This document shows positions 17,316-34,404 of a DNA stretch of 64,000 bases, one piece after another; positions within the stretch are counted from its first letter, which is position 1; each line of letters begins with the position of its first letter. The notes beneath the pieces are model-generated. The model was not told where the DNA came from, made no database searches, and was given only the letters and a program-made list of their open reading frames with translations. Location: the IMG/VR virus record IMGVR_UViG_3300047558_000137, positions 62,001 to 126,000 of that record. The stretch is one strand, 5' to 3'. Both the position numbers and the translations under genes were made by a program.

Positions 17316-17497
17316 TTAACTTTTAACCATACACGATCGTGTACATAATGTATAATCATAAGACCTATATGTATACCTATCGCTGTTGATAATCCTGTCC
17401 ACACAGCGGTAAAAATTACTGCCAGTAACCGGTATGTTACAATTCTTGCTAAAGTTCTTTTATGTGTTTCTATCATTTGCCCCAGCCGTTGCCCCAC
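17300..17497 (-). CDS. DUF2061-like small membrane protein
   Basis: THKRTLARIVTYRLLA...YVHDRVWLKVKWG. Confidence 0.6.
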   Translation of the reverse strand: MGQRLGQMIETHKRTLARIVTYRLLAVIFTAVWTGLSTAIGIHIGLMIIHYVHDRVWLKVKWGDN

Positions 17498-18330
17498 AAG
17501 TCAACGTGTAGACGTGGACTGTAGTTGTAACCTTTGCTTAGTGCCCAGTCTGCTACCCGAACACGGTTGGCGGCATAAGGAGTAACAACACCACCTTGTG
17601 GCATTACATAGACAGGACCATGAAACCCAACAGCACGATATTGACCAACTGCACGATCTACTTCTGCAAAGTGTTCGTCTGTTTCCACAACAAACTTCAA
17701 GTAGGTAAAGCCGTAGTCTTGGTACATACGCACAATCTCTGGACGAATTGCTTCGTCCCATGCTTCGCCACTTGCACTTAGCTTGGGACTTACTGAGAAT
17801 GTAATTTCATTGCCAGCAATATCAACCCAGTCTAAGATGTAGTCAATAAACCTACCTTGCAGAGTTTGTGTACCATTTGTTTCGAATGTGATATTACGCA
17901 AGTCCTGCATACGCTCATGTTCTAATAACTCTTGATACGCACGTTGCCAACCTAGCAATGGTTCACCACCTGTAATTACAAGATGCACATCGTTGCCATT
18001 GTCCTGCACCCAACGATGATTGGGTGTAAGAGCTAGCATTTGATCTACTAGATCTTTTGTTTCTACTGTTGGGCTTAGATCTTTAAAAGCAGGATGCCAC
18101 GATGCGTAGCTGTCGCATCCAGTATTAACTAAGGGTAGACTAGTAAAGTCTTTATACAAGTGGACATTCTTTGCCACTTCGTCGGCCTCCGTTGACGTTT
18201 CGCCTGGCTTGCAGCCAAAGCCTGCACATGTAAAATTACATCCAAATGTGCGTAAGAATACTGATGGTACGCCAACAAAACGGCCTTCACCTTGAGCGCT
18301 GTAAAAGAGTTCACTGATTTTTAATTTCAT
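17473..18330 (-). CDS. queE: 7-carboxy-7-deazaguanine synthase (radical SAM)
   Basis: ISELFYSAQGEG...VFLRTFGCN, ITGGEPLL, FETNGT, SVSPKL, PRLHVDLWG. Confidence 0.92.
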   Translation of the reverse strand: MKLKISELFYSAQGEGRFVGVPSVFLRTFGCNFTCAGFGCKPGETSTEADEVAKNVHLYKDFTSLPLVNTGCDSYASWHPAFKDLSPTVETKDLVDQMLALTPNHRWVQDNGNDVHLVITGGEPLLGWQRAYQELLEHERMQDLRNITFETNGTQTLQGRFIDYILDWVDIAGNEITFSVSPKLSASGEAWDEAIRPEIVRMYQDYGFTYLKFVVETDEHFAEVDRAVGQYRAVGFHGPVYVMPQGGVVTPYAANRVRVADWALSKGYNYSPRLHVDLWGNGWGK

Positions 18331-18333
18331 ATG

Positions 18334-18498
18334 TTACCAATGTCGAATTACACCTGCTACAATAAACAGGTTAGTTATGATATATGTTAGCACAATTGCT
18401 GTGCGGATGCAAGCAATACGGTCAGATTCTTTGTCCGTATTTCCTGCTTTCTCTCCAAGTGCCTTGGCCCATAATCTCCAAAATTTATTTCTTTCCAT
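18334..18498 (-). CDS. Small membrane protein (54 aa, not in the ORF track)
   Basis: MERNKFWRLWAKALGEKAG...IRTAIVLTYIITNLFIVAGVIRHW; fills the gap. Confidence 0.6.
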   Translation of the reverse strand: MERNKFWRLWAKALGEKAGNTDKESDRIACIRTAIVLTYIITNLFIVAGVIRHW

Positions 18499-19213
18499 GG
18501 ACAATGTTTTTTATTAAGTCTATATTAAGTTGCCCTTGCAACCATTTTCTATAATAGTTTACAGATTCTTCTGTAGGCAATGTACCTAAATTTTTAAGAT
18601 GTGTAAAAAATTTAGTTTCGCTATATAGGTCCAATAAATTAACAACATAGTCGGCGTCTGTTGTTAACTCTGTCGGTAACCCGTCCCTAAACAAATCTAC
18701 ATTGTTACGAAAGTAATCAACAAGTTGATTAAAGTTTACTGGCAATTGAGTAGGCAAGTTAATAAATTGGGAATCAATCATTGCCCTTTGTTGTATAGAA
18801 TCCTCACCTAGGCATACTGTTGCGTTAAACCTTGCCCAGTTTTCTAGCACAATCGGATACAGTTCTTGACTATAATGTATAGCAACAGTAAAAAGTTGAT
18901 CACCAAAATGTTGTTTCATTGGTAATAACTGATTATGATATACAGTTGCTAACCATACGTGTCTTTTTTCACTTTCGAGGAAAGATTCCAACGCATGAAT
19001 ATTATTAGGCCAATTAATATTTCTCCATCTGCATCTATTAGCCTGTGTAAACATTTTTACATACGGCTCAATAGTTGAACTATTATATAAAAGAATGCCG
19101 TTATCGGTTATATCAGCAATGCATGGCCGAAGCCATGCATTATTAAATCCACCTAAACAAATAATGAATACATCGGCTACAGTAGCCTGTGGAAAAACTC
19201 CAAAATACAGCAT
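18485..19213 (-). CDS. Hypothetical protein (AT-rich)
   Basis: 242-aa ORF coupled to the isocitrate lyase stop. Confidence 0.6.
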   Translation of the reverse strand: MLYFGVFPQATVADVFIICLGGFNNAWLRPCIADITDNGILLYNSSTIEPYVKMFTQANRCRWRNINWPNNIHALESFLESEKRHVWLATVYHNQLLPMKQHFGDQLFTVAIHYSQELYPIVLENWARFNATVCLGEDSIQQRAMIDSQFINLPTQLPVNFNQLVDYFRNNVDLFRDGLPTELTTDADYVVNLLDLYSETKFFTHLKNLGTLPTEESVNYYRKWLQGQLNIDLIKNIVHGKK

Positions 19214-20421
19214 TAATGGAATTGATCAGCTTCGGTTGAATGTTTGTTAGCTACAGTAGAAGTTGCGCCCACTGCTTCACTAATCAAGTCAAAATAACCA
19301 ACGCCAACTTCACGTTGATGTTTGACAGTAGTGAATCCACGTTCTTGGGCCGCAAACTCACGCTGTTGCATTTCACTATATCCAGCCATACCACGTTCCT
19401 TGTATGCTTCTGCTAATTCAAATGTAGCTAAGTTAACTGAATGGAATCCTGCTAATGTAATAAATTGGAACTTGTAGCCTAGTTCACCTAGTTCACGCTG
19501 GAATGATTCACACTCGGCTTCGCTTAAAAACTTACGCCAATTAAAACTAGGACTACAGTTATAAGCAAGCATTTGATCAGGGTACTGTGCGTGTATAGCA
19601 TCGGCAAACTTTCTAGCTTGTGCAATATCAGGCGTACTAGTTTCGAACCATAAGAGATCAGCGTAAGGGGCATAAGCAAGACCTCGGCTAATACAAGCAT
19701 CAATACCATTTTTAAATTTGTAAAAGCCTTCGTCAGTGCGTTCATTGATAATAAAGTCCTTGTCCAATGGATCATGATCTGATGTGATAAGTGTTGCGGC
19801 TTCGGCATCTGTGCGAGCCATAATAACTGTGTCAACACCTGCAACGTCTGCGGCTAAACGTGCGGCATTTAGTGTGCGAATCATTTGTGATGTTGGAACA
19901 AGAACTTTGCCACCTAAGTGACCGCATTTCTTTTCACTTGCTAACTGGTCTTCAAAGTGAACACCTGCCGCACCTGCTTCAATCATATGTGTCATTAACT
20001 CGTATGCGTTTAATGCGCCACCAAAGCCTGCTTCTGCATCTGCTACGATAGGCAAGAAATAATCTGTTGTTACTTTGCCTTCACTATGTTCAATCTGGTC
20101 TGCACGACGGAATGCGTTGTTGATACCTTTAACTACACGAGGAACACTGTCAACTGGGTATAGTGATTGGTCCGGATATGTAGTGTTTTGTGTATTATTA
20201 GCAGCCGCTACTTGCCATCCGCTTAGATAGATGGCCTTTAATCCTGCTTTAGCATGTTGAACTGCCATTTGTCCATTGTATGCACCTAATGTATTAACAT
20301 AAGGCTCATTGGCCAATAATTCGCGTAGTTTGTGTGCTCCACGCTTCGCTAATGTGTGTTCTACTTGTAAACTACCTTGTAGCCTACGAACTGTTTCTTG
20401 TGTATAATTTCTTTTCTTCAT
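19213..20421 (-). CDS. aceA: Isocitrate lyase (glyoxylate shunt)
   Basis: [64 protein letters not shown]; likely start MKKRNY at 20421 with AAGGA SD. Confidence 0.95.
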
Positions 20422-20431
20422 ATATTTCCTT

Positions 20432-20647
20432 TTAAGTTCCACAATCCATGCGCCAAGGACACATAGATAAAGTAACAGTTGCACAATCATCCTGACCAAA
20501 ACATCGTGGTTGATTGGTTCTCTTTAATCTAATTATTGTGTGAATCTTTTTGCGTTCTTCGCTATTGCTATGCCCTGTATTAGAGAGCATGGCTTCTTCA
20601 TTGAGCAATTTTTGCAGCTCACTTAATCCAGAAGATTCTCGTTCCAT
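20432..20647 (-). CDS. Possible small Cys-containing protein
   Basis: ORF fills the queD-aceA gap; C-terminal RC...DC...MCPWRMDC; start uncertain. Confidence 0.4.
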
Positions 20648-21177
20648 TCTCGGTGCCCTTCACGGTATGCCATGTTGCTTTGTGTTTCACGTACCTCAAC
20701 TCTGTAGCACCACAAACGTTCAGCTTCTCCTGGGCCCCACATCTCGGGGATGTAAACGCCATTGACATACTTGTAAAGCATATCTGAGAGTGCTTCGCAT
20801 CCTAGTGCAGGAAGTACAACAATCTTGGCCATTTTCTTTTCTTGCAACAGTTTAAATGTTTCCATTTCTGGATCATCTTGTGCAACAATTAGCGTGTGGT
20901 CAAATTGATCTTCTAGTGTCTTTTTTAGTTCTTTAAGGCCGCCGTAGTCCGCGGCCCAATTACGAACGTCTAGGTCATTGGTTCCAAAATAGAACTTCAT
21001 ACTAAACGCATAACCATGAATCAAATTGCAGTGACTATCCGCACGCCACTGACGGTATGCTACTGGAAATGCATTGTGATATTCTTTTGTACTTGTGTAC
21101 TTGTATTGTACTGGTCGGGTGTTTTGTAAGTTTTCTTCTAGATGACGAATCAAGTCGCCGGTTGATGAGTTTGCCAT
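20623..21177 (-). CDS. queD: 6-carboxytetrahydropterin synthase
   Basis: HCNLIHGY, DYGGLK..K..L..QFDH, E.L, VRET.SN; AGGAG SD. Confidence 0.88.
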   Translation of the reverse strand: MANSSTGDLIRHLEENLQNTRPVQYKYTSTKEYHNAFPVAYRQWRADSHCNLIHGYAFSMKFYFGTNDLDVRNWAADYGGLKELKKTLEDQFDHTLIVAQDDPEMETFKLLQEKKMAKIVVLPALGCEALSDMLYKYVNGVYIPEMWGPGEAERLWCYRVEVRETQSNMAYREGHREWNENLLD

Positions 21178-21184
21178 TGTGAAT

Positions 21185-21250
21185 CTCCTATAAGTTAATA
21201 TAGGCTTGCAGAATTTGTATAGCGGGATGAATGCCGAGAAAGGCCGCTGG
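21185..21250 (-). promoter_or_regulatory. Candidate preQ1-I-like riboswitch/structured leader of queD
   Basis: AGCGG...CAUC-CCGCU stem followed by AUACAAA; CCUAUA/UAUAGG hairpin overlaps the SD. Confidence 0.45.
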
Positions 21251-21259
21251 TTGAATTAG

Positions 21260-21265
21260 TATTTA
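21260..21265 (-). promoter_or_regulatory. T4-like late promoter box TAAATA
   Basis: GATAAATAC overlapping the PRTase stop, upstream of the queD leader. Confidence 0.5.
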
Positions 21266-21796
21266 TCTCCACCAGTGTTCCCATGGAAAAACACACCAAA
21301 TATCAATCTCTTGTTTGTTGATAGTATGACCAACATAGTTAACATCTTTAAACTCGCTAGCATCGTTATTAATCAATGCCGCGGTACGCACGTTGGCGCC
21401 CCAGATGTCTTGCCAAGCAGGATCATTAGGCATACAACTGCTACGCCAATCCTCTTGTATCCATTTGAATGTTGCACCACTGTCATTAATGTCGTCAACA
21501 ATCAAAATGTTCTTACGCTTGAACTCATCACTTTGCCCATCTTCGTAGCCAAATGCATCTTCGCTCATCCAGAGATTACTTTCTGGGCCAAAGTCGCTGT
21601 CACGCAGACTTGCATTAAGACTATGCATAGGAATGTTAAAGTAATGACTCAACATTACAGCAGGAGTAAGTCCACCACGTGATAGGCCTACGATATAATC
21701 TGGGCGCCAGTTATCTGCAACGATTTCGCGGATAATATTATGAAGCCACCCATTAACTTCATTTTGTTCGTAATATACTTTAGTAGTAGAACTCAT
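21263..21796 (-). CDS. Type I phosphoribosyltransferase (xanthine/guanine PRT-like)
   Basis: YIVGLSRGGLTPA and ILIVDDINDSGAT (PRPP-binding loop). Confidence 0.88.
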   Translation of the reverse strand: MSSTTKVYYEQNEVNGWLHNIIREIVADNWRPDYIVGLSRGGLTPAVMLSHYFNIPMHSLNASLRDSDFGPESNLWMSEDAFGYEDGQSDEFKRKNILIVDDINDSGATFKWIQEDWRSSCMPNDPAWQDIWGANVRTAALINNDASEFKDVNYVGHTINKQEIDIWCVFPWEHWWR

Positions 21797-22142
21797 TTAC
21801 TTCTTTCAAATTATGTTTAACAACACGTTCGTTGAATTTTAACAGAAACATACTGGCAGTACTAGCATCTTTGCCTAAAAAGTGTAGGCGAACATTACCA
21901 GTTCCGTCTTGCATATAATGACAGGCTTTGCTGTTATAAGACACATATGATCTGCGTGTATGCTTACCTCGGTGCGAGTATTCATCTTTGTGTGATACTG
22001 TACCTTCGATTAACCTATACCAGTCAACTATCTCGTCGGTTAACTGATCTATGTCAATAGTGATACCGTATGCTACAGTACAGCCTGGTGGTAGTGCGAT
22101 CATTTTGCTCTGGCAGACAAATATTCTTCGTGCTGTACCCAA
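21780..22142 (-). CDS. Hypothetical protein
   Basis: 120-aa ORF; start uncertain. Confidence 0.55.
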   Translation of the reverse strand: MGTARRIFVCQSKMIALPPGCTVAYGITIDIDQLTDEIVDWYRLIEGTVSHKDEYSHRGKHTRRSYVSYNSKACHYMQDGTGNVRLHFLGKDASTASMFLLKFNERVVKHNLKEVNEFYY

Positions 22143-22558
22143 CCTTTGTTGGTTAGGAATCCCCAGTCACGCCGCTGTGGGCCTGGCATAAACAAGGTCC
22201 AACAATCTACTGCGGGGTCAAGTTCAATGCGGTGGTAACTGTTTGCACCAGCCATTCTAAAGCTGCCTGGGCCACACCAGCGAGCAATTTCGCCAATCTT
22301 TTTTCCGTTGGCATCAAACTGTGGACGCCATTCCCAGTAGCCGCCTTTTAGGATAAGAGTGGCATAAGGCCAAGGGTGGTCATGCACATCATCGGGATCT
22401 GATTTGAGAAACTTGTGCAAAAACACATTAAACGGAAACCGTGTACGGTCTGTGAGAAAGAGGTAATATCTTTCAAGGTATGGTTCATCATTGATCCTAT
22501 CCATAACAATACGCTTGCGACCCATTCGTTCAAGCAGGTTGAGAAACTTAGTAAACAT
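22100..22558 (-). CDS. Cupin-fold protein
   Basis: LHKF..SD..D.HDHPW...LILKGGYWE...HRIEL...WTLF. Confidence 0.65.
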   Translation of the reverse strand: MFTKFLNLLERMGRKRIVMDRINDEPYLERYYLFLTDRTRFPFNVFLHKFLKSDPDDVHDHPWPYATLILKGGYWEWRPQFDANGKKIGEIARWCGPGSFRMAGANSYHRIELDPAVDCWTLFMPGPQRRDWGFLTNKGWVQHEEYLSARAK

Positions 22559-23760
22559 TACATCTCCTGAGTGTAAAGGGTTCTGTTAATAGATTGTAGC
22601 ATATACAACTTACCTGTGCTAGAGTTTTGGTAAACAACACCCGAGTCTACACTCCAGTTAAATCCTGGCGTATATCCTGCTTGTTGTGCCATCTCAACAA
22701 AACGATTTTGGTTATATGCTACTACTGTATTGTTTTGAATCTTGTATAAACGGCTCTGTAAGTTTGATCCGCTAACATATAGATACTGTGTGCCATTAAA
22801 CACTAGTGCTCTGTGATGGTATAGGCTATAGACATTGTCTTCAACAGTGTATGCGTAGGTATAGTTACCGGCCCCGTTATTTGTCCATACTTCTCGTCGA
22901 CCTTTTGTATTGTCTGTTGTGCTGTTAAACACTAGAATAAAGTCTCGATGCCCGTCATTGTTAACATCAAGGCTAACACTGTCAATTAAATCATTGGTGG
23001 CAGGATCTTGACTAGACACATTAACTGTACTAATTAAATTCAAGTTGCTATCATAGGTATTAATGTGATTACTGTTGCCCGCTACAATAGACACACGGCC
23101 ATTTGATTCATGATTAATACTGCAAGTTGCACCCGAGCCAATGGCTGTGCTAAATGTGAAAGACCGGTTGCCGTTGTTAATATATAGCCCACCTTGTGTT
23201 GTATGTGTAGCCTGATCATAAACTCCACGCACTAAAACATCCAAGCGTCCATCATTGTTAATGTCGTCTACACAGGCACCGTGGCTATCTAACTGCTCGG
23301 GTAATGTCTGTTGTACAAACTGTCCGGGCTGATTCCAAAAGATAACACTGTTTACTGCACAACCGCCAACACAGCCATCATTGAAGCCGGGAATAAAAAT
23401 ATCATTGCGTCCGTCATTGTCAAAGTCTTGTATAAAGATACGCTGACTGCCACCGTATGTAACCACAGGAAGAATACTAGCGGTGCGGTCAACTAAGGTA
23501 CCATCAGTGTTTTGTATGAGCACATAGATGTTAGTATTAGATCCGGGACCCGACCAGCCGCCCACAACAACATCATCTAATCCGTCACCATTAAGGTCGC
23601 CAACAGCCATGTTTCGAATGCTACCTGATGTATAGGTTAACACAGATTGCAATGCTTTAGTATTACTAGCAGGAGTAGCAGGAGCAGAACCTCCTCCCCC
23701 GCCGCCTCCGCAAGCAGTTAATACTAAAGTTAACAAAAAAGGTGCAATGAGTTTTATCAT
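22558..23760 (-). CDS. FG-GAP/VCBS-repeat beta-propeller lipoprotein
   Basis: Signal peptide with LTAC lipobox then poly-Gly; GDLNGDGLDD, DFDNDGRND, DINNDGRLD, DVNNDGHRD repeats; likely start at 23760. Confidence 0.8.
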   Translation of the reverse strand: MIKLIAPFLLTLVLTACGGGGGGGSAPATPASNTKALQSVLTYTSGSIRNMAVGDLNGDGLDDVVVGGWSGPGSNTNIYVLIQNTDGTLVDRTASILPVVTYGGSQRIFIQDFDNDGRNDIFIPGFNDGCVGGCAVNSVIFWNQPGQFVQQTLPEQLDSHGACVDDINNDGRLDVLVRGVYDQATHTTQGGLYINNGNRSFTFSTAIGSGATCSINHESNGRVSIVAGNSNHINTYDSNLNLISTVNVSSQDPATNDLIDSVSLDVNNDGHRDFILVFNSTTDNTKGRREVWTNNGAGNYTYAYTVEDNVYSLYHHRALVFNGTQYLYVSGSNLQSRLYKIQNNTVVAYNQNRFVEMAQQAGYTPGFNWSVDSGVVYQNSSTGKLYMLQSINRTLYTQEM

Positions 23761-23766
23761 GCACCT

Positions 23767-23775
23767 ATTATAACA
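23767..23775 (-). promoter_or_regulatory. Extended -10 promoter for the lipoprotein gene
   Basis: TGTTATAAT (TGn-TATAAT) 6 nt upstream of the ATG at 23760. Confidence 0.5.
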
Positions 23776-23785
23776 TAGTTTCGAA

Positions 23786-24529
23786 TTAACGCGGAGCGAA
23801 CTCTTGCTGTAGCTTGATGTTATCAAAGAACTCTTTTTTAGTACTTTGATCCCGTTCAAATGCGCCTTTTAGTACTGTGGTCTGTGTGAGGCTACTGTGC
23901 GCCATAATACCACGATTCTCGCAGCATCCGTGGGTAGCTTGGATATATACCGCAACATCATTCGATCCAGTGGCAAACCCGATCTCACGAGCGATGTCCA
24001 TGCAAAGTTCTTCCTGAAGTGTTCCGCGGCGAGCACACCATTGTGCGATTCTAGTATACTTACTAAGTCCGATGAGCTTTGGCCCAGCAATAATTCCAAT
24101 ATAAGCCACGCCTGACACAGGCTGATGGTGATGGCTACACATGCTCTTAAGCTCACTACGCACAACCAACATGCCTTCGTATCGTCCTTCTGTGTCATTT
24201 GGGAAAGCCGTTGCGTTAGGTGTTGGTTCGTAGCGACCAGCCATGATTTCATTGTAGTACATTTTTGCAAGGCGTCTTGCTGTACCTTTACTGTTAGGAT
24301 CATTTTCTCTATCAATCAATAATGTGTCTAGTACACGTTCAAATGCTTCTGTAGCTTCGTCGATTAGTTGATCTTTCATTTTGTCGTCGATGTATTCGCT
24401 GACATTATCTCCTGCCCAGAATCTTTTGCCATCACGTTTAAATTTAAAGCGAAGGTGATCGCATACTTTGCCTAATCCATATCCGCCGTCTCCGGCCATT
24501 GCATCTAGTGCTGTTTCTTTATCTGTCAT
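23786..24529 (-). CDS. folE: GTP cyclohydrolase I
   Basis: GTARRLAKMY, SMCSHHHQP, IGLSKYTRI, RRGTLQEEL, HGCCENRG. Confidence 0.93.
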   Translation of the reverse strand: MTDKETALDAMAGDGGYGLGKVCDHLRFKFKRDGKRFWAGDNVSEYIDDKMKDQLIDEATEAFERVLDTLLIDRENDPNSKGTARRLAKMYYNEIMAGRYEPTPNATAFPNDTEGRYEGMLVVRSELKSMCSHHHQPVSGVAYIGIIAGPKLIGLSKYTRIAQWCARRGTLQEELCMDIAREIGFATGSNDVAVYIQATHGCCENRGIMAHSSLTQTTVLKGAFERDQSTKKEFFDNIKLQQEFAPR

Positions 24530-24530
24530 T

Positions 24531-25130
24531 TTAATCCTTGATAGTGATTGTTCTTAAATCTGGGTACTGTACTAATACAGGGTCAACTGGAAACTCTTTA
24601 AGTTTTTCTAGTAAAGCAAGTCCTCGATCGGCTTCTTCAATAGTAGGCTTATAGTGATATCCAACTCTAAACTCTCGTTGTTCTACCCAGGGTGATGTAT
24701 TTAGGTCGCGGCCATCATAGCGCATTAAAATTATTGCATCATATGCAGCCTTGTCGTCTAACAGTATAGCACCTCCGCGGCCGATTTGTAAAGGCTTTCC
24801 TTGTCCAAAGCTGAGACATTGCATCGTTCCTGCTCGATACATATTCTTTTCTAAACGTCTAGCACTATCCCATATTCTAGTTAATCCAAAAGGATATTCT
24901 CCAATCCATTGTTTAGGCGAATGATTTTCATACATGTACTTAATTTCTAATTTATGCATAAGCATAGGGATACTCAGATAGGTAAACGGCGTCATAATAA
25001 CTTCCTGTACCTGCTCATAACGCATACACAACTCAATTGCGTGTGTACAACAGTCAGTCATGACGGCGTAAGGAGCACCTGTATACTCTGCTAGTGCTGT
25101 TTCAAATTGTTTAATTTTATCAAATGTCAT
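24531..25130 (-). CDS. Short DegT/DnrJ-like PLP-dependent aminotransferase
   Basis: FE..LAEY.G..YAV.TD.CT.AI.L, WDSA, LSFGQGKPL, GGAILLDD; only 199 aa. Confidence 0.7.
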   Translation of the reverse strand: MTFDKIKQFETALAEYTGAPYAVMTDCCTHAIELCMRYEQVQEVIMTPFTYLSIPMLMHKLEIKYMYENHSPKQWIGEYPFGLTRIWDSARRLEKNMYRAGTMQCLSFGQGKPLQIGRGGAILLDDKAAYDAIILMRYDGRDLNTSPWVEQREFRVGYHYKPTIEEADRGLALLEKLKEFPVDPVLVQYPDLRTITIKD

Positions 25131-26155
25131 AGATACATTGTCTCCATTGACTGAGGATTATCTAGAATATTTTGTATATTGATATTGTGTATGTTAGGCC
25201 TACATGGCTGGCAAAAAGCAACTCTAGTTTGATTATAAACTTCCATATGACGCTCACCCAACCATTCATCTCTAAAGTCACCCGAGTCCCACGACCCAAT
25301 TCTGAAATTAGGATTACCTTTATTTTCACAGCAGGTGTATATTCCACCATCTGCACAGAACACAGGAAAATGAAACATCTGATGACACTTCTTATAATTA
25401 CGTGTTAGATACTTGTTTAAGTTGATTTTATGTTCAACTTGATATCTCTTGCCTAGTTCATCTATCAGGGCCAGAGTCTTATTAGATATGTGGTATGCTA
25501 CATTGTTAACAATAGCCGGCCTAAAAAATACTGATCTGGCTCGTGTATCTCGGACTAACATAAAAATATCTGTTAGGGCCTGTTCGTTATCGTTGTAATC
25601 ATTAAGCAGTATTTTAAAATCAACATTTACACCAGCATCGATTAACCCACGTGCATTATTAATAACCTTGTTAAAGATACTTTTTTTAGGTATAGAACGT
25701 CGAATAGTTTCGTATAATTCTTCTGTTGCGGCATCTATATCAATACCTACCCAACCTAATTTGCGTAGCTTATCTACTGGTACTTTATTAAGTAATACAT
25801 CTAAGTTTGTGCCATTGGTTGTAATACTGGTTAGGAATCCTAGATCAATGGTATGTTCGATTACGTTTTCGTACCCTTTAAGCAAGGTGGGTTCCCCTCC
25901 GCCCGGGTAAGTGATAGTGTGTAAACTGCCATAGCTTCTGGGACTATGTGAACGCCAAGAAGCCAAACGATCTAGTAATTCTATATATTCACTGTATTGT
26001 TTTTGTACAGGCATTTCTTTTCTAAACTCTGCACTGTTACAATAGAAGCAATCTTGATTGCAGATATTAGTTAGGTCTATGTCGATTGATGCAGGCAATA
26101 TCTTCATGGTAGATGAATTGCCCATCCAGTGTACTACTTCAGCGTATTGATACAT
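25127..26155 (-). CDS. Radical SAM protein with SPASM/twitch-like C-terminus
   Basis: CNQDCFYC, GGGEPTL, TTNG; C-terminal C...ADGGIYTCC...CQPC. Confidence 0.85.
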   Translation of the reverse strand: MYQYAEVVHWMGNSSTMKILPASIDIDLTNICNQDCFYCNSAEFRKEMPVQKQYSEYIELLDRLASWRSHSPRSYGSLHTITYPGGGEPTLLKGYENVIEHTIDLGFLTSITTNGTNLDVLLNKVPVDKLRKLGWVGIDIDAATEELYETIRRSIPKKSIFNKVINNARGLIDAGVNVDFKILLNDYNDNEQALTDIFMLVRDTRARSVFFRPAIVNNVAYHISNKTLALIDELGKRYQVEHKINLNKYLTRNYKKCHQMFHFPVFCADGGIYTCCENKGNPNFRIGSWDSGDFRDEWLGERHMEVYNQTRVAFCQPCRPNIHNINIQNILDNPQSMETMYL

Positions 26156-27105
26156 GTTTTTATTTCTTGTTTATATGGTTGCCCGAACAGCCCTGCAAAA
26201 AAATTGTCAGCATTTCTTTGTCTACGAGCAAGGGTATGTTGATTTAATTTATACAGATCTTGGGCCATTAACGAATCTAATAATTCGTGTACCTTGTCTA
26301 TTCTACTAGACCAGTTTAATTCTGTATCATAATACTTATGATCAACAATATCGTCAAATGTGTCCACACCTAAACTACGCAAGTGATCTACAGCACCTGG
26401 TGCACCGATCATTAAAAATAATTGCCCACTGGCAACGGATTTCCATGTCTTCTCTGTAATAAAGACTTCAGGTAACACTGTTGTTTCTGTGATAAGATTT
26501 ATATAACTGTTACTATATGCAGGATTATAAATTTCATCTTCGACCCCGGGGCGAATTTTATTTCTATTAGGCAATGAATCTTTAATTGTATTCCACTCCT
26601 CGGCAACACTAGGCTCTAATTTATAATCGTCGTGTCTGCCGGGATCAAAGTCGGACCGGTGCATAGTAAACAGCATTTTGTCAAAGTAGGACTTTTTGCG
26701 TAATGCCAGATAATTATAGATTCTATTAAAACGTGGTGCGGCATTAAGGCATGACACAGGATAGAGTTTTTCTAGTGTGTTAATACGTAAACAGCGTTGA
26801 TTAAAATTATCTTTTGTCCATTCGTACCACCACGGATAAAATAATAATCTAGGTTTTCTTAAATGGTCAGCTGGATTATATGTTAAAAGAATAAAGTTTA
26901 TATTATTTTCTTCCAGTAACTGATATACGTAATCAATAGAAGTTGACCAATGCTCACTGCTTAAATCAGCAATAACCAATGGATAGTTTTTAAATTCTTC
27001 TATGTGCTCGACAATATTATAGTTGATATTATTGAGAAAATAAAAGGCATTTGTTTGGTTTCGAAGAACTATCAAGTCGCTGGTTGGGCTCTGCTGCAAT
27101 ACCAT
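26134..27105 (-). CDS. Putative glycosyltransferase (GT10-like TEK motif)
   Basis: YINLITET...FITEKTWK...GQLFLMIG; paralogue of 7439..8620. Confidence 0.5.
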   Translation of the reverse strand: MVLQQSPTSDLIVLRNQTNAFYFLNNINYNIVEHIEEFKNYPLVIADLSSEHWSTSIDYVYQLLEENNINFILLTYNPADHLRKPRLLFYPWWYEWTKDNFNQRCLRINTLEKLYPVSCLNAAPRFNRIYNYLALRKKSYFDKMLFTMHRSDFDPGRHDDYKLEPSVAEEWNTIKDSLPNRNKIRPGVEDEIYNPAYSNSYINLITETTVLPEVFITEKTWKSVASGQLFLMIGAPGAVDHLRSLGVDTFDDIVDHKYYDTELNWSSRIDKVHELLDSLMAQDLYKLNQHTLARRQRNADNFFAGLFGQPYKQEIKTCINTLK

Positions 27106-28079
27106 TTATATGCACTATCAATAATTTCTTCTATGCTACTGTGTTGGGGTTTCCAGCCTAGCCATGTTTCTGCATCGTCGGCATCGGCAACTAGTCGTTC
27201 TGGATCGCCAGGTCGCTTGGGACCATAGTTAACAAAAGGCAACCCGTAAGTATTAACTACATAGTCAACAATGTACTTATTACTAATTCCTTGGTTGGTC
27301 CCCAGATTAAAGATATGGCAATCTGACACACCGGTAATTGTACTGCGTTCTAGAAACTCTGCGGCACGTACATGTGCTGTAGCAATATCCCATACGTGTA
27401 CATAGTCGCGCACACACGTACCATCGCTAGTTCCATAATCATCACCATTAATGGTAAATCCACGACCTGCTAGGCTTGCTTCTAATACACGGGCAACAAT
27501 GTGCGTGGCATTAGGTTCTTGGCCTAGATCAAAGTCTTTAGGTTCAGCGCCCGCGGCATTAAAGTATCTAAAGACTACACTGTTAAGATTGTATGCTCTA
27601 GCATAGTCCCATAAGACTTCTTCGATCATGTCCTTGGACTTGCCGTAAGGACTCATTGGTCTCTTAGGGTGTCCTTCTTTTAATGGAAGGTCTTCAGGCT
27701 CAGGATCGCCATATACTGCGGCACTGCTACTAAACATAATGACAGGTTGCTTCTTAAAGTCCTTAATGTAGTTTAAGAACTTAACGGTCTTGGCTACATT
27801 GTTATCATAATAGTCAGCAGGATCTGTTACACTGGGACCAACTAGACTAGTGCCAGCACAGTGTACAATGATATCGGGCTGTAGATCGAAGATAGTTGCT
27901 AGACTTTCATCGCTTGAAAAGTCATTAACAAAGAACCCGTCTAGGCCCTTTAGTGTATGTTCACGTAGAACACGATCAATAACAAACACACGGTTGTCTG
28001 CGTTAGCATACTTAAATGCTCGTGCGACATGGCTACCAATGTAGCCACATCCACCTGTAACAATAATAGTTTTACTCAT
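27072..28079 (-). CDS. galE: UDP-glucose 4-epimerase-like SDR
   Basis: TGGCGYIGSH, FSSSAAVYG, YGKSK, FRYFNAAGA, DGTCVRDYVHV, RPGDP. Confidence 0.85.
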   Translation of the reverse strand: MSKTIIVTGGCGYIGSHVARAFKYANADNRVFVIDRVLREHTLKGLDGFFVNDFSSDESLATIFDLQPDIIVHCAGTSLVGPSVTDPADYYDNNVAKTVKFLNYIKDFKKQPVIMFSSSAAVYGDPEPEDLPLKEGHPKRPMSPYGKSKDMIEEVLWDYARAYNLNSVVFRYFNAAGAEPKDFDLGQEPNATHIVARVLEASLAGRGFTINGDDYGTSDGTCVRDYVHVWDIATAHVRAAEFLERSTITGVSDCHIFNLGTNQGISNKYIVDYVVNTYGLPFVNYGPKRPGDPERLVADADDAETWLGWKPQHSSIEEIIDSAYKWYCSRAQPAT

Positions 28080-30589: not shown

Positions 30590-30987
30590 TCGTCTTTGTA
30601 TTTCTTTAATAAAGGACTATTGATATGCTTAATAGCCTGTTCAAGATGCTTCATTTTTTGATCTTCGAGTTCCCATTTGCTTAGACTCCAGTGATTTTGG
30701 GCATCAACAGCAGTTGTGCCATAGCGTGTATTCATAGCGGAGATACTACGCATTTCACTTTCCATACGTTCTAGTCTTCGTATGATCTGATTTTGATCAT
30801 CGAGTACTTGACGCAATGGTCCAATGGTGGCACCTTTACGACCCTCAGGCTTGGTTAAAATAACCATCATCATTAGACTACGTAGTGCATTGATCACACG
30901 CTCGTCGTTGCTAGTTAATGCTTCATCAAACATGTCAATGAAACGCTCAAGATCGAAGTCTGCCTGCTCTTTTTCTCTCATTCCCAT
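30586..30987 (-). CDS. Hypothetical coiled-coil protein
   Basis: 133-aa ORF. Confidence 0.6.
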   Translation of the reverse strand: MGMREKEQADFDLERFIDMFDEALTSNDERVINALRSLMMMVILTKPEGRKGATIGPLRQVLDDQNQIIRRLERMESEMRSISAMNTRYGTTAVDAQNHWSLSKWELEDQKMKHLEQAIKHINSPLLKKYKDE

Positions 30988-30990
30988 TTT

Positions 30991-31650
30991 TTATCCTTTA
31001 ATGTAATAGCCTTTACCGTAGCTACGACTGTGTACGATTTTATGGCATTCTATAGGTATTCCAAACCGTCCATTGGCCAATTCACCAACGAATCTAGGAA
31101 CTCCCCCATCTGTTGTATTATATAAAATATCGTCAAACACAACAATGCCACCTGGACGAACTAAGGGTTCGTATAATAACCAATCGCATAATACAGAATG
31201 GTAACTATGATCCCCATCAATGAACAACAGGTCAACTTGATGTACAGCATCGTATATTTTTTTAACAGTTGCAGGATCTTGGCTACTACCAATGGCAAAG
31301 TGTGATCGCCCATCGTTGCCAAACGAATGCCCAAAAACCTGTTCAGTTCTTAGGCTAAATTCGTTTACTCGATTGTGATTTTGTTCAATGGTGTAGACTT
31401 GGTCTGCAATATTACGCCACATAACGTGCGTACTACCAAAATGACCTAATCCTATTTCTAATACAGTAGATAGTCTGCCGGGCATAACGTGTAGAAGATC
31501 TTGGATTTCTCTTCGGACCTGTTGCATTCCGTGAACCGGCATCACTTGTAAGTCGGGCAATGGATCGATTGCATCTTCTGCATAATACTTTCCATTACCG
31601 CACATACTAACCCAACTATCTAACTTAGCCAGGATTTCGTCTACGTTCAT
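30991..31650 (-). CDS. Class I SAM-dependent methyltransferase (Methyltransf_24-like)
   Basis: VLEIGLGHFGS, VDLLFIDGDHSY, LVRPGGIVVFDD. Confidence 0.85.
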   Translation of the reverse strand: MNVDEILAKLDSWVSMCGNGKYYAEDAIDPLPDLQVMPVHGMQQVRREIQDLLHVMPGRLSTVLEIGLGHFGSTHVMWRNIADQVYTIEQNHNRVNEFSLRTEQVFGHSFGNDGRSHFAIGSSQDPATVKKIYDAVHQVDLLFIDGDHSYHSVLCDWLLYEPLVRPGGIVVFDDILYNTTDGGVPRFVGELANGRFGIPIECHKIVHSRSYGKGYYIKG

Positions 31651-31653
31651 TGA

Positions 31654-31926
31654 TTAACGTGCCCTAAAGTTATGGTTACCGTTTGTGTTGCGAGGACGGA
31701 ACTCAGTACGTTCACGTCGTGGGCTGCGCCACTGATCCCATGGTTCACGCCCTTTAGCGTACTTCATGTATTCTGCATAAGCAGGCTTACGCTCGTTGTA
31801 TAGGTGTGACTCGTCAAAGACGTAGCCATAGTCTACGCAAAATCTTTTAAATGACTCAAGGTCCTCGAAAATGTTGCGGACTTCAGATTTCATTGTGAAG
31901 TATTTTTGTAGATGTTCGTTAGCCAT
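31654..31926 (-). CDS. Hypothetical protein
   Basis: 90-aa ORF with SD. Confidence 0.65.
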   Translation of the reverse strand: MANEHLQKYFTMKSEVRNIFEDLESFKRFCVDYGYVFDESHLYNERKPAYAEYMKYAKGREPWDQWRSPRRERTEFRPRNTNGNHNFRAR

Positions 31927-31935
31927 TTTTATTCC

Positions 31936-32376
31936 TTAAACGCTAATTTGTTGTGGTCGGTGAGTTTCATATTTAATAAGTGCGCCGTTTTCACCATCTT
32001 CGGCCACTTCAATCCAGACACTACGTCCAGGATATTTTGATGCGATTTGCAAATACAAATCGTCTGCAATCATTTCGCACGACTTAAAGTCAAGGTGTAT
32101 GGTTCCATCTCTGTAGAGATTTTCCAGCCAACGCTTGAACTGAATAAATTCCACATCCCGGTCATTATGAAAAACATCGATCCAAACACGGAAGTGGAAT
32201 ATATGGCGATGAGGCACCCCAAGAAAAGATACATCATACTCATCACCGGTCGCCAAAGCAGGATCAGTTGCTGCGGCTGGATATTTGTGAATGCCTTCTT
32301 TACGGAATGTAACCCAGATTTTTCTATCTGCACGTTCTTTAATCCTATCTATAGTAGCACGTTGTTCTTGATTCAT
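31936..32376 (-). CDS. Second QueD/PTPS-like T-fold protein
   Basis: GIH.YP, PHRHIFHFRV, DRDVEFI..K..L, SCEMIA..L, V.EDGENG. Confidence 0.6.
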   Translation of the reverse strand: MNQEQRATIDRIKERADRKIWVTFRKEGIHKYPAAATDPALATGDEYDVSFLGVPHRHIFHFRVWIDVFHNDRDVEFIQFKRWLENLYRDGTIHLDFKSCEMIADDLYLQIASKYPGRSVWIEVAEDGENGALIKYETHRPQQISV

Positions 32377-32882
32377 AATGGTGTATCCTTAGTATATTTA
32401 GACCAGTCAGTAAAGACTTTTCTATTTCTTAATTCATGTAGACTATGACACCAGACTCCTGGATTAGTTGCAGCAAAGTCTTTGTCGTCTAGCTTAATTG
32501 TAGCATTGTAGCCTAGCATTTGTATATAGGGTAATTTTACCGAAATCATCGGAATAAAATTATTGTATTCGCAAAGAGCTCCTTCTACTAGACCTTCAGC
32601 CGATTGTACATCAATATCTAATGTACATAGATATCCTTGTTTTAGATAATGTGTAATCATATCTTCCCAGGCCTTCCATGTATCAGCATCATTAATTGCT
32701 GGATTAGGAAAGCTCATGTTAGCGCCAAAGTAAATGTGCTGACCCGGCTTCTTTAATCGAGCAGTAATATCTGCTGTTGATTGTACGCCAACAACAAACA
32801 AGGTATCCATGCCATATGCAGGGGTGTGTTCTACTTCAACACCGTAAAAGAAATTTACATCTTCATGCCCGGGTCTGTCCAT
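32373..32882 (-). CDS. Hypothetical protein in the deazaguanine cluster
   Basis: 169-aa ORF coupled to the TGT-like gene. Confidence 0.7.
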   Translation of the reverse strand: MDRPGHEDVNFFYGVEVEHTPAYGMDTLFVVGVQSTADITARLKKPGQHIYFGANMSFPNPAINDADTWKAWEDMITHYLKQGYLCTLDIDVQSAEGLVEGALCEYNNFIPMISVKLPYIQMLGYNATIKLDDKDFAATNPGVWCHSLHELRNRKVFTDWSKYTKDTPL

Positions 32883-34404
32883 CTTCCAATTCCTCTAGTT
32901 TATGTTCGTCAAGTTCTACTTCGGGGTCTTCGTCTACAAACTCAACAAGTCTGTTAAACACAGTATTTGAGTTCATAGTCTTTTTACCTTTAAATCCACG
33001 AGTACCTACAATTTCCATCCAGTAGTCACTATATGAATTAATTATAGCAATGCTTTCTTCTTTAGTCTTTGCTGCAAATATACGTTCTACAATATCTTCA
33101 AAGTAAGAATAGTCGCCAGTACTGTAACGCATCATAGCAGGATGTTCTCCGGCATCGAATCGACGATTGGCTTCTTGTACCGCTGTTAAATGTTGATAGA
33201 CATTATGACCCATTAGCAATGCATATGAGAAACTGTCCCAACTAGTCTTGCCTTCTTTGCCAATCTTATTTAGATCTCCTGGCTTGTAGATACAGATATC
33301 TTTCATAGTTAGCAAGTCACTAATGGGACTATTTTGCCAACGATCGTAGATGCCGTCCTGTACTACGCCGGTGGCCCAAGGTCTGGTGTCTGTGGCGTAT
33401 TTTTTGTCGTCTGCGCTTGGGGCCATTCTGTAGCTCCATTTTGAGTCGTGTTCGAAGACGTTTTCGAAATAGACTTGGCCATTCGCCGTCGCAAGGAATG
33501 GACTAGCGCAATCAAAACTAATAGTAAAAGCAGGGTTGACATATTTTCTTACAGCTCTCTGAATAACGGTGAGCAATACTGCCCACTCTAATTTACTTGT
33601 GCCCAAGAAGTGCATCCAATCATGCCGGCCTTCTTGTAACAAGTTATCGTAACGTAGTTCAGTTAGGCGTTTAAGCACCAAATGAACATCACACATGTTC
33701 TGTCCTCCCATTGCCCATCCATCAAAGTGTGTATCTGGATAAACATCAGGATCACAAAATTCTTTCATAGTCTGGTACCATTCTTCGGCACTGGTATGAT
33801 TATCACCTTGTAACACATTTAAGAAACGTGCGCCACCATTCTTAACACCCTTACGATGCTGCATGAAATAGTTATTATTAAACTTAGTTGCGTCTACTGC
33901 TTCTTGCAGTGTAGTAATCTGACAGGCTGCACTTGCTTTCTTATCATGTATAACCCAAGTAGGAATATCAAGAATCATGCCATAATCGGCAATATTGTCT
34001 AGCCAGTTTAATATGAGCTCGCGTTTTTTCTGCGCCTTAGGACAACCCGAATTGGCTTTCCAATCCCCTTCCCACAGCCCTTTAGCAATCTGGAAACCAC
34101 CCGAGTCGCCAAGAATAAAAGATCCAGCTTCCCTATTTCGAACCATATCCTCTGACCAATCTTGTTTATTAAGGTCAAGGTTCGCATGTCCTCCACTATA
34201 CAAACTCCATTTATACGGAAATAAACCCTTAGTTGAGTTGAGCCAATTAAGCTGCTCCATATCAGTAAGACCCTGAGGAAATCTTGCGGGATCAACATAC
34301 TGTTCATTACGTTGTTTGCCTATAAATGTAGCATAGAAGCCGGAAATAGCAGGGAGAAAAACTGCATAGTCTAATTGTTTACTTGTTAAATCATCTTGCG
34401 CCAT
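32863..34404 (-). CDS. TGT-fold deazaguanine transglycosylase (DpdA-like)
   Basis: LGDSGGFQI (catalytic Asp), MILDIP, NVLQG, GWAMGG, MHFLG, SFDCASP, HN; 513 aa; no CxCxxC zinc motif seen. Confidence 0.75.
   Translation of the reverse strand: MAQDDLTSKQLDYAVFLPAISGFYATFIGKQRNEQYVDPARFPQGLTDMEQLNWLNSTKGLFPYKWSLYSGGHANLDLNKQDWSEDMVRNREAGSFILGDSGGFQIAKGLWEGDWKANSGCPKAQKKRELILNWLDNIADYGMILDIPTWVIHDKKASAACQITTLQEAVDATKFNNNYFMQHRKGVKNGGARFLNVLQGDNHTSAEEWYQTMKEFCDPDVYPDTHFDGWAMGGQNMCDVHLVLKRLTELRYDNLLQEGRHDWMHFLGTSKLEWAVLLTVIQRAVRKYVNPAFTISFDCASPFLATANGQVYFENVFEHDSKWSYRMAPSADDKKYATDTRPWATGVVQDGIYDRWQNSPISDLLTMKDICIYKPGDLNKIGKEGKTSWDSFSYALLMGHNVYQHLTAVQEANRRFDAGEHPAMMRYSTGDYSYFEDIVERIFAAKTKEESIAIINSYSDYWMEIVGTRGFKGKKTMNSNTVFNRLVEFVDEDPEVELDEHKLEELEDGQTRA

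What the first reader, a model, noticed from the sequence alone, without database searches (positions are those of the whole stretch)
17473..34404. 7-deazaguanine DNA-modification pathway with no recognisable QueC
Seen: folE (23786), queD (20623), queE (17473) and a TGT/DpdA-like gene (32863) are present, but no QueC, QueF or Gat-QueC is recognisable in the window. Established: FolE-QueD-QueE yield 7-carboxy-7-deazaguanine (CDG); QueC converts CDG to preQ0; phage DpdA enzymes place deazaguanines in DNA to block restriction. Inference: the base may be CDG itself, decarboxylated 7-deazaguanine, or a CDG derivative made by non-QueC enzymes. QueC could also lie outside the window or be supplied by the host.
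Basis: partly seen in the sequence, partly recalled or inferred. Interest (0 to 1): 0.75.

Follow-up and report, generated by a model that had tools for sequence, protein, structure and literature searches.

The report
QueC-less 7-deazaguanine DNA modification with DpdL

Summary
folE, a queD-like gene and a queE-like gene lie at the stated coordinates. The 513-aa ORF 32863-34404 has no Pfam, PHROG or NCBIfam match, but it is a TGT-fold protein: model pLDDT 92, all top PDB matches are TGT, and both catalytic Asp motifs are conserved.

QueC, QueF and ArcS are absent from the whole 374-kb genome, whose ends overlap, so it appears complete.

It is a homologue of DpdL, the proposed CDG decarboxylase of Cellulophaga phage phiST, whose G is fully replaced by 2'-deoxy-7-deazaguanine (dDG). 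BLASTP gives E 4e-18, and the signature LxxxHRHxF is present as LGVPHRHIF.

In six lineages carrying this transglycosylase family, five have DpdL and no QueC found (whole genomes for this phage, PA5oct and Phosso; 8-kb contigs for two). One has QueC and QueF and no DpdL.

The likeliest product is therefore dDG or a derivative, inserted by base exchange. This is a new variant of a known system:
- The transglycosylase is only remotely related to DpdA2, and not detectably or only partially to DpdA1 and DpdA3.
- A GT-B glycosyltransferase, an SDR and a purine-type phosphoribosyltransferase travel with it, also in Pseudomonas phage PA5oct.

These extras leave room for a further modified base or a nucleotide-level route.

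The parts
32863..34404 (-). DpdA-like transglycosylase: a TGT-fold protein of 513 aa, the predicted DNA guanine / 7-deazaguanine base-exchange enzyme
   Evidence: Model pLDDT 92. The top 50 PDB matches listed, of 176 with E <= 0.001, are all TGT. D100 (GDSGGFQ) and D298 (SFDCASP) are invariant in 68 homologues and align to the E. coli Tgt catalytic motifs. hhalign against Vibrio phage nt-1 DpdA2 gives 92%, E 5e-7. There is no Pfam TGT hit.
32373..32882 (-). u169: a conserved protein of unknown function between the DpdA-like gene and dpdL
   Evidence: Present in 34 of 34 relatives with enough flank and in PA5oct at 46% identity. The model has pLDDT 79 and matches no known fold.
31936..32376 (-). 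DpdL homologue: a T-fold QueD paralogue, the proposed CDG decarboxylase
   Evidence: Carries the motif LGVPHRHIF, which fits LxxxHRHxF. BLASTP against phiST CGPG_00067 (DpdL) gives E 4e-18 at 34% identity. The motif is conserved in relatives. It is 58% identical in PA5oct and 70% in Phosso, and absent from the QueC-encoding Vibrio phage 2.275.O.
29399..30589 (-). GT-B (GT4-like) glycosyltransferase, linked to the cluster; acceptor unknown
   Evidence: Atlas neighbours are Glycos_transf_1 / GT4 clusters, and Pfam gives a weak Glyco_trans_1_2 hit. Found in 31 of 34 relatives. A second GT-B type sits beside DpdA/DpdL in L011, PA5oct and Phosso.
27072..28079 (-). NAD-dependent NDP-sugar epimerase/dehydratase (SDR)
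   Evidence: PF01370 E 2e-45. Found in 30 of 34 relatives. PA5oct has a short SDR between DpdL and QueE.
24531..25130 (-). Truncated DegT-like (PLP fold) protein of 199 aa, directly upstream of folE
   Evidence: PF01041 E 2.8e-19. It aligns in two pieces to sugar aminotransferases and keeps the Lys motif. Found in 31 of 34 relatives.
23786..24529 (-). FolE, GTP cyclohydrolase I
   Evidence: PF01227 at 131 bits. NCBIfam FolE models match below their equivalog cut-offs. Found in 31 of 34 relatives.
21263..21796 (-). Type I purine (6-oxopurine-type) phosphoribosyltransferase
   Evidence: PF00156 E 2.6e-12. The best PDB matches are archaeal purine PRTases and HGPRTs. It is linked to the cluster in L011 (FolE-PRT-QueE), in PA5oct (0321 beside QueE) and in 6 relatives.
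20623..21177 (-). QueD-like CPH4 synthase (PTPS family) with the motif CNLIHGY
   Evidence: PF01242 at 54.8 bits. It is the only PTPS match in the genome. The same CxxxHGY variant occurs in the QueD of phiST, PA5oct and Phosso.
17473..18330 (-). QueE-like radical SAM CDG synthase
   Evidence: phrog_2076 E 3.4e-53. NCBIfam QueE models match weakly, below their cut-offs. The N-terminal motif aligns to solved QueE structures.
36749..39415 (-). Family B DNA polymerase, marking the replication module that the modification genes sit in
   Evidence: PF00136 and PF03104. The order PolB-u312-u244-DpdA is syntenic in 78 of 80 relatives and in PA5oct, Phosso and Vibrio 2.275.O.

Best explanation
The interval is a QueC-independent module for modifying DNA with a 7-deazaguanine, carried by a complete 374-kb freshwater jumbo phage.

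FolE, a QueD-like enzyme and a QueE-like enzyme convert GTP to 7-carboxy-7-deazaguanine (CDG). This step is inferred from family membership. In place of QueC, a DpdL homologue at 31936-32376 processes CDG, most likely by decarboxylating it to 7-deazaguanine. That is inferred from homology to phiST DpdL, whose activity is itself only proposed. A divergent TGT-fold enzyme at 32863-34404 sits in the replication module next to the DNA polymerase and exchanges guanine in phage DNA for this base. That is inferred from its fold, its catalytic motifs and its gene neighbours. The result would be 2'-deoxy-7-deazaguanine (dDG), or a derivative of it, which protects the DNA from restriction.

The purine-type phosphoribosyltransferase in the cluster most simply recycles the guanine released by base exchange into GMP, and so back into GTP for FolE. 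That role is speculative.
For: - The gene identities are supported.
- TGT fold and catalytic motifs. Remote homology to the proven DNA transglycosylase DpdA2 of phage nt-1.
- DpdL homology and motif.
- QueC, QueF and ArcS are absent from the complete genome.
- Five lineages with this transglycosylase family have DpdL and no QueC found: this clade, L011, L012, PA5oct and Phosso. For this phage, PA5oct and Phosso that rests on whole genomes; for L011 and L012 only on 8-kb contigs. Vibrio phage 2.275.O has QueC, QueF and Gat and no DpdL.
- DpdL lies beside the transglycosylase in 34 of 34 relatives with enough flank, and no QueC occurs in any of 80 loci.
- phiST, which has FolE, QueD, QueE, DpdL and a DpdA but no QueC, has all of its G replaced by dDG (PMC10516641).
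- DNA of PA5oct, a cultured relative with the same gene set, resists G-containing restriction sites and is targeted by nucleases that sense modified G (PMC12191111).
Against: - No chemistry is available for this phage.
- DpdL's decarboxylase activity has never been shown. Co-expression of DpdL and DpdA in E. coli gave no dDG (PMC10516641).
- The transglycosylase is not of the DpdA3 type found with DpdL in phiST.
- A GT-B glycosyltransferase, an SDR and a PRTase are linked to DpdL in lineages whose DpdA-like proteins are only 35-46% identical, yet are absent from phiST. Plain dDG offers no obvious acceptor for a sugar, so the final base may differ.
- FolE could also serve folate metabolism, since DHFR and ThyA are in the window.
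Confidence: 0.6

Rival explanations
1. The final base is a further modified 7-deazaguanine, for example a glycosylated or amino-sugar-bearing one, rather than plain dDG. The conserved GT-B glycosyltransferase, SDR epimerase/dehydratase and DegT-like protein would build and attach the extra group.
For: - GT396, the SDR and DegT199 lie between dpdL and folE in 30-31 of 34 relatives.
- A GT-B gene directly adjoins DpdA/DpdL in L011, PA5oct and Phosso. PA5oct also has an SDR there.
- The QueC/QueF-type Vibrio phage has no GT at that position.
- PA5oct is hit by nucleases that sense hypermodified DNA.
- Atlas neighbours of GT396 include tRNA-queuosine mannosyltransferase clusters, which is a lead only.
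Against: - dDG has no hydroxyl or amine at C7 to accept a sugar.
- Three close relatives lack GT396 at this place, and L011 lacks the SDR and DegT.
- Shared gene order within one clade can be inherited rather than functional.
- The sugar genes, including a second set at 2302-4352, could instead serve virion or host-surface glycosylation.
- No such base has been reported.
Confidence: 0.2
2. A nucleotide-level (pre-replicative) route like tubercidin biosynthesis. The PRTase joins CDG to PRPP, DpdL decarboxylates the nucleotide to 7-deaza-GMP, kinases and ribonucleotide reductase yield 7-deaza-dGTP, and the phage polymerase incorporates it. The TGT-like enzyme would then have a secondary or different role.
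For: - Tubercidin synthesis uses GCH-I, CPH4 synthase and CDG synthase, then a CDG-specific PRTase (TubE) and a decarboxylase, with no QueC (PMC6112128).
- A purine-type PRTase is linked to FolE/QueE in this clade, L011 and PA5oct.
- L011 also has a small P-loop kinase in the cluster.
- DpdL plus DpdA alone failed to give dDG in E. coli.
Against: - A conserved TGT-fold enzyme with intact catalytic residues is present in every lineage.
- Every phage known to carry 7-deazaguanines has a DpdA, and the field infers post-replicative insertion (PMC10516641).
- phiST makes dDG without a PRTase of its own.
- The PRTase was seen in only 6 of 25 relatives within a 10-kb flank.
- No homologue of phiST's MazG-like dNTP pyrophosphatase was found by tblastn in this genome.
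- Similarity to TubE was not tested.
Confidence: 0.12
3. The TGT-like enzyme acts on tRNA (phage or host) rather than DNA, or it inserts host-made preQ0. The phage genes would then only boost precursor supply.
For: - The fold and motifs are those of tRNA-guanine transglycosylases.
- The genome encodes 34 tRNAs, including the four GUN-anticodon tRNAs that carry queuosine.
- Host QueC cannot be examined.
Against: - No QueC, QueF, QueA or ArcS-type genes are present to make a tRNA-type substrate.
- The gene sits between the DNA polymerase and dpdL in the replication module in all lineages.
- DpdL and QueC are anticorrelated.
- PA5oct DNA itself is restriction-resistant.
Confidence: 0.05

Closest known systems
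Cellulophaga phage phiST dDG system: FolE, QueD, QueE, DpdL and DpdA3 (Cui et al. 2023, PMC10516641)
   Same: - It has FolE, QueD and QueE but no QueC.
- It has a DpdL with LxxxHRHxF (BLASTP E 4e-18).
- Its QueD carries the same CxxxHGY variant.
- It has a TGT-superfamily gene two genes from dpdL, close to the DNA polymerase.
   Different: - The transglycosylase here is 513 aa against 259 aa, and is not a DpdA3: there is no HMM hit and hhalign gives only 75% over a partial region.
- The QueE is of a different subtype, with no BLAST match.
- phiST has a MazG-like gene and no GT-B, SDR or PRTase. This clade has those three, and no homologue of phiST's MazG-like gene was found by tblastn.
DpdA2 of Vibrio phage nt-1 and VH7D, experimentally shown DNA transglycosylases inserting preQ0 or preQ1
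   Same: It is the nearest named DpdA subfamily: hhalign 92%, E 5e-7, with DSGG and (S/F)YDSS aligned, and a BFVD structural match at E 1.4e-7. VH7D DpdA2 is promiscuous and inserts some CDG (PMC10516641).
   Different: The relationship is very remote: the profile HMM gives E 0.002 at 13 bits, and tblastn finds no DpdA2 phage. This family is as close to E. coli Tgt as it is to DpdA2. Here it works with DpdL rather than with QueC, ArcS or QueF.
Pseudomonas phage PA5oct (Wroclawvirus) cluster EST35_0316-0322
   Same: It has a homologue of the 513-aa protein (35% identity), a GT-B, DpdL (58%), a short SDR, a PRTase and QueE in one block after the DNA polymerase. FolE and QueD lie elsewhere, and there is no QueC. 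Its DNA is experimentally resistant to G-site restriction enzymes.
   Different: It has a different host and a smaller genome. Its GT is of the other GT-B type. It has no DegT-like, cupin or radical SAM genes in the block. Its base has not been identified chemically either.
Tubercidin biosynthesis, TubC/A/B/E/F (PMC6112128)
   Same: It is a QueC-less route from GTP to CDG, followed by a purine-type PRTase and a decarboxylation.
   Different: It makes a free nucleoside antibiotic. Its decarboxylase is UbiD-type, not T-fold, and it has no transglycosylase. Homology between the phage PRTase and TubE was not tested.

Membership tests
DpdA / TGT superfamily | TGT (beta/alpha)8-barrel fold | tested here: met
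   The AF2 model has pLDDT 92 and pTM 0.91. Foldseek against PDB gives 176 hits at E <= 0.001; the top 50 listed are all TGT.
DpdA / TGT superfamily | Catalytic Asp in DSGGFQ and nucleophile Asp in the FDC..P motif | tested here: met
   D100 and D298 are invariant in 68 homologues. They align to the E. coli Tgt DSGGFQ and FDCVMP motifs.
DpdA / TGT superfamily | Match to Pfam TGT (PF01702) at the gathering threshold | tested here: not met
   There is no hit for the protein or anywhere in the genome. A profile of the family reaches PDB TGTs only at E about 1.2.
DpdA / TGT superfamily | Genomic linkage to 7-deazaguanine synthesis genes | tested here: met
   Seen in the window, in 80 IMG/VR relatives, and in L011, L012, PA5oct and Vibrio 2.275.O.
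DpdA / TGT superfamily | Exchanges guanine in DNA (not tRNA) for a 7-deazaguanine | not testable with these tools
   Only indirect support: PA5oct DNA is restriction-resistant.
Named subfamilies DpdA1, DpdA2, DpdA3 | Sequence membership, detectable by profile | tested here: inconclusive
   The A1 profile finds nothing in phage 9g (DpdA1), CP220 or phiST (DpdA3), and only E 0.002 in nt-1 (DpdA2). hhalign gives 92% for DpdA2 and 75% for DpdA3 over a partial region. No tree was built, and DpdA4 was not compared.
DpdL | Homology to phiST CGPG_00067 | tested here: met
   BLASTP E 4e-18 at 34% identity over 118 aa. The genome search placed the hit exactly on CGPG_00067.
DpdL | Signature LxxxHRHxF replacing the CxxxHGH of QueD | tested here: met
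   LGVPHRHIF in the window. The motif is kept in nearly all relatives and in L011, L012 and Phosso. PA5oct has LGYPHFHYF.
DpdL | Occurs with FolE, QueD, QueE and a DpdA, without QueC | tested here: met
DpdL | CDG decarboxylase activity | not testable with these tools
   Not demonstrated even for the type member (PMC10516641).
QueD (CPH4 synthase) | PTPS fold family and the CxxxHGH motif | tested here: inconclusive
   PF01242 scores above its cut-off. The motif is CNLIHGY, with the last His replaced by Tyr. The same variant is in phiST QueD, a phage that does make dDG. The NCBIfam QueD model matches below its cut-off.
QueE (CDG synthase) | Radical SAM QueE family membership | tested here: inconclusive
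   phrog_2076 E 3.4e-53 over the full length. All NCBIfam QueE equivalogs match far below their cut-offs. Pfam Radical_SAM scores 18.6 bits, below its cut-off.
QueC / Gat-QueC, QueF, ArcS | Presence of PF06508, PF14489 or PF17884 in the genome | tested here: not met
   No match in the complete genome, while control genomes ring.
TubE-like CDG phosphoribosyltransferase | Type I PRTase domain, with specificity for CDG | tested here: inconclusive
   The PF00156 domain is present and the nearest solved structures are 6-oxopurine PRTases. Substrate specificity and similarity to TubE were not tested.

The most novel reading that the evidence does not exclude
A very abundant clade of freshwater jumbo phages, together with the cultured Pseudomonas phage PA5oct and Sinorhizobium phage Phosso, may use an unclassified TGT-superfamily branch plus DpdL, a GT-B glycosyltransferase, an SDR and a purine PRTase. 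With these they could make a guanine replacement not yet described, either a sugar-bearing 7-deazaguanine or a 7-deazaguanine introduced through a tubercidin-like nucleotide route.
Probability: 0.2. Interest if true: 0.85.

Novelty: new variant of a known kind. Interest (0 to 1): 0.55.

Why it matters
The apparent gap, no way from CDG to an insertable base, is closed by a known explanation: DpdL. That lowers the surprise.

Three things still matter.
- The transglycosylase family is very large: 939 clusters at 50% identity and more than 7,500 at 90%. It is invisible to Pfam, PHROG and NCBIfam, and the public annotations seen for it read 'hypothetical protein'. 7-deazaguanine DNA is therefore probably under-counted in jumbo and freshwater phages.
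- It pairs DpdL with a transglycosylase that is not a DpdA3.
- The recurrent glycosyltransferase, SDR and PRTase genes are unexplained. PA5oct is cultured and already known to have restriction-resistant DNA of unknown chemistry, so the question can be tested directly.

Tried and rejected
- Megablast of the interval against 50,697 phage records found nothing.
- Pfam, PHROG, NCBIfam, PADLOC and PDB sequence searches of the 513-aa protein gave nothing usable.
- The search for related loci with the 68-sequence alignment failed for lack of a conserved stretch. It worked with a closer 11-sequence alignment, but that returned only relatives at 61-85% identity.
- Neighbourhood look-ups for three distant family members (P0137, P0148, P0168) gave short or uninformative contigs.
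- I worried that the QueD-like protein might be inactive because of CxxxHGY. I set this aside because phiST QueD has the same variant.
- I checked whether the single PTPS match might itself be DpdL. It is not: it keeps the catalytic Cys, and DpdL is a separate ORF too divergent for PF01242.
- u169 could not be assigned: Atlas scores stayed below 0.9 and no fold matched.
I dropped it and did not send it elsewhere.
- A search for hydroxymethyl-pyrimidine chemistry as an alternative acceptor for the GT found only one ThyA-family gene, scoring 354 bits like a canonical thymidylate synthase. That does not decide the matter.
- The supplementary tables of Cui et al. are not held. I could not check whether PA5oct-type proteins were already listed there as DpdA2.
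- Read laying was not used. Only assembled contigs of metagenomes are available, and they cannot show base modification.

Full report
**Context.** The window is bases 62,001-126,000 of a 374,314-bp virus record. CheckV rates the record 100% complete. Its two ends overlap by about 130 nt, so it is a complete jumbo-phage genome. GC content is 41%. The source is a freshwater metagenome, and parts of the sequence recur in many freshwater studies. Between 14 and 39 kb every gene is on the minus strand.

**Checking the observation.**
- ORF 23786-24529 is GTP cyclohydrolase I: PF01227 at 131 bits.
- ORF 20623-21177 is a PTPS/QueD-family protein: PF01242 at 54.8 bits against a cut-off of 22.4. It is the only such match in the genome.
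- ORF 17473-18330 matches the PHROG 'QueE-like radical SAM domain' over its full length at E 3.4e-53. It shares the N-terminal QueE motif with solved QueE structures. It falls well below the NCBIfam QueE equivalog cut-offs.
- ORF 32863-34404 (513 aa) has no hit in Pfam, PHROG, NCBIfam, PADLOC or PDB by sequence. The Pfam TGT model finds nothing in the genome.

The 513-aa protein does contain GDSGGFQ and SFDCASP. I collected homologues: 939 clusters at 50% identity and more than 7,500 at 90% identity. I aligned 68 of them. D100, S101, G103, H265 and D298 are invariant. The AlphaFold model has pLDDT 92. The top 50 PDB matches listed, of 176 with E <= 0.001, are all tRNA-guanine transglycosylases, at E about 1e-6. 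Among viral models it matches nt-1 DpdA2 and, weakly, phiST DpdA3. hhalign against E. coli Tgt gives 93%, E 3.7e-7. It aligns both catalytic aspartate motifs.

QueC, QueF and ArcS models find nothing in the whole genome, while control genomes ring.

Two genes downstream of the transglycosylase, ORF 31936-32376 (146 aa; phrog_17812, 'unknown function') contains FLGVPHRHIF. Cui et al. 2023 (PMC10516641) define DpdL as a QueD paralogue in which CxxxHGH has become LxxxHRHxF. They proposed it as the CDG decarboxylase of Cellulophaga phage phiST, whose G is entirely replaced by 2'-deoxy-7-deazaguanine. A search of the phiST genome with the window protein lands on CGPG_00067, which is DpdL. BLASTP gives E 4e-18 at 34% identity, with the motifs aligned. 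The window's QueD-like protein carries CNLIHGY, and the QueD of phiST, PA5oct and Phosso carry the same CxxxHGY variant. That deviation is therefore not a sign of inactivity.

**Comparative evidence.** tblastn finds the 513-aa family in only 13 cultured-phage records. These are the PA5oct group of Pseudomonas jumbo phages, Sinorhizobium phage Phosso and Vibrio phage 2.275.O, and all are annotated 'hypothetical protein'.
- PA5oct and Phosso have FolE, QueD, QueE and DpdL (58% and 70% identical) but no QueC.
- The Vibrio phage has QueC, QueF, a Gat-like gene, a YhhQ-like transporter and FolE next to its copy, and no DpdL.
- Two metagenomic lineages with 43-44% identical transglycosylases (L011, L012) also have DpdL beside it.
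- In 80 IMG/VR relatives at 61-85% identity, the gene order is PolB, MTase, u244, (u210), DpdA-like, u169, DpdL, u90, GT, SDR, DegT-like, FolE, (cupin, PRT), QueD ... QueE.
- Among the 34 relatives with at least 6 kb of downstream flank, DpdL and u169 are present in 34, GT396 in 31, the SDR in 30, the DegT-like gene in 31 and FolE in 31. None of the 80 loci has QueC.

So DpdL and QueC are alternatives within this transglycosylase family, and this genome is of the DpdL type.

Experimental support exists for a relative. [quoted passage not shown] The base itself has not been identified (PMC12191111).

**Placement of the transglycosylase.** The family profile finds nothing in phage 9g (DpdA1), or in CP220 and phiST (DpdA3). 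It gives only E 0.002 in nt-1. hhalign gives 92%, E 5e-7 against nt-1 DpdA2, with the catalytic motifs aligned, and 75% over a partial region against phiST DpdA3. It is about equally distant from E. coli Tgt. I treat it as a deep relative of DpdA2 or an unnamed subfamily. I built no tree and did not compare DpdA4. No paper in the searchable library names a further subfamily.

**Mechanism.** What the sequence shows is the gene set, the fold and catalytic residues, the absence of QueC, and the linkage. The rest is inferred:
- GTP is converted to CDG by FolE, QueD and QueE.
- CDG is converted to 7-deazaguanine by DpdL.
- Guanine in DNA is exchanged for that base by the TGT-like enzyme.

The weakest link is DpdL's activity, which has never been demonstrated. 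DpdL plus DpdA gave no dDG in E. coli.

**Unexplained companions.** These genes keep me from calling this an ordinary new member.
- A GT-B glycosyltransferase accompanies DpdA/DpdL in all five DpdL-type lineages. One type is found in this clade and L012. A second type is found in L011, PA5oct and Phosso. The two are related in their C-terminal halves at E 9e-6.
- The Vibrio QueC-type phage has an amidoligase-like gene at that position instead.
- PA5oct also has a short SDR and a PRTase between DpdL and QueE. These mirror the window's SDR (27072-28079) and PRTase (21263-21796).
- L011 has the order FolE, PRT, QueE, P-loop kinase.
- phiST has none of these genes.

The PRTase resembles 6-oxopurine PRTases. 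It could salvage the guanine released by base exchange. It could also act like TubE of tubercidin biosynthesis, which joins CDG to PRPP in a QueC-less pathway that then decarboxylates at the nucleotide level (PMC6112128). Plain dDG offers no obvious acceptor for a sugar. Either the GT has another target, or the base in this clade is not plain dDG. I could not resolve this. u169, conserved between the transglycosylase and DpdL, has no recognisable fold.

**Verdict.** The absence of QueC is explained by a DpdL-type route already described for phiST. The most likely product is dDG or a derivative, inserted post-replicatively (confidence about 0.6). I rate it a new variant of a known kind, because the transglycosylase branch is unclassified and the accessory genes are conserved. 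PA5oct offers an immediate experimental test.

Noticed in passing
window 19213-20499 (-): A full-length isocitrate lyase lies between queE and queD: NCBIfam NF011645 at 692 bits, above its equivalog cut-off of 562. This is an unusual auxiliary metabolic gene for a phage. It was not seen in the 10-kb flanks of 80 relatives.
   Followed up: partly
window 919-4352 (+): DHFR (919-1428), a ThyA-family gene (1391-2305, 354 bits), a second NDP-sugar epimerase/dehydratase (2302-3267) and a full-length DegT aminotransferase (3249-4352, 252 bits). The phage therefore has a second amino-deoxy-sugar gene set next to folate and thymidylate genes.
   Followed up: partly
window 24531-25130 (-): A 199-aa 'half-size' DegT-like protein that keeps the PLP-lysine motif (SFgqgKplqiGrGG) but lacks the C-terminal domain. 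It lies directly upstream of folE in 31 of 34 relatives.
   Followed up: partly
window 25127-26155 (-) and 30991-31650 (-): A radical SAM protein with weak viperin/MoaA-like matches, and a CmcI / rhamnosyl-O-methyltransferase-like methyltransferase, lie among the sugar genes. Both are rare or absent at this place in relatives.
   Followed up: no
window 22100-22558 (-) and 22558-23859 (-): A cupin (phrog_4786, 'cysteine dioxygenase', E 2e-39) and a FG-GAP repeat protein lie between folE and the PRTase. The cupin recurs as FolE-cupin-PRT in several relatives.
   Followed up: partly
window 35809-36747 (-): A class I SAM-dependent methyltransferase (Methyltransf_12) sits immediately next to the family B DNA polymerase and is conserved in 72 of 80 relatives. 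It may be a further nucleic-acid modification enzyme.
   Followed up: no
window 35020-35754 (-): u244 is conserved between PolB and the transglycosylase in every lineage examined, including Vibrio phage 2.275.O. Its PA5oct homologue is annotated as a virion structural protein detected by MS. It has no family match.
   Followed up: partly
genome G000:C1 176114-176189 and 298681-317167 (outside the window): The genome encodes 34 tRNA genes, including His, Asn, Asp and Tyr GUN tRNAs, and one tRNA with a CUA (amber-reading) anticodon.
   Followed up: no
L003 13723-14835 (Vibrio phage 2.275.O NVP2275O_469): In the QueC/QueF-type relative, the gene after the transglycosylase is weakly Amidoligase_2-like rather than a glycosyltransferase. 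A vWA protein and a wHTH protein sit inside its deazaguanine cluster.
   Followed up: no
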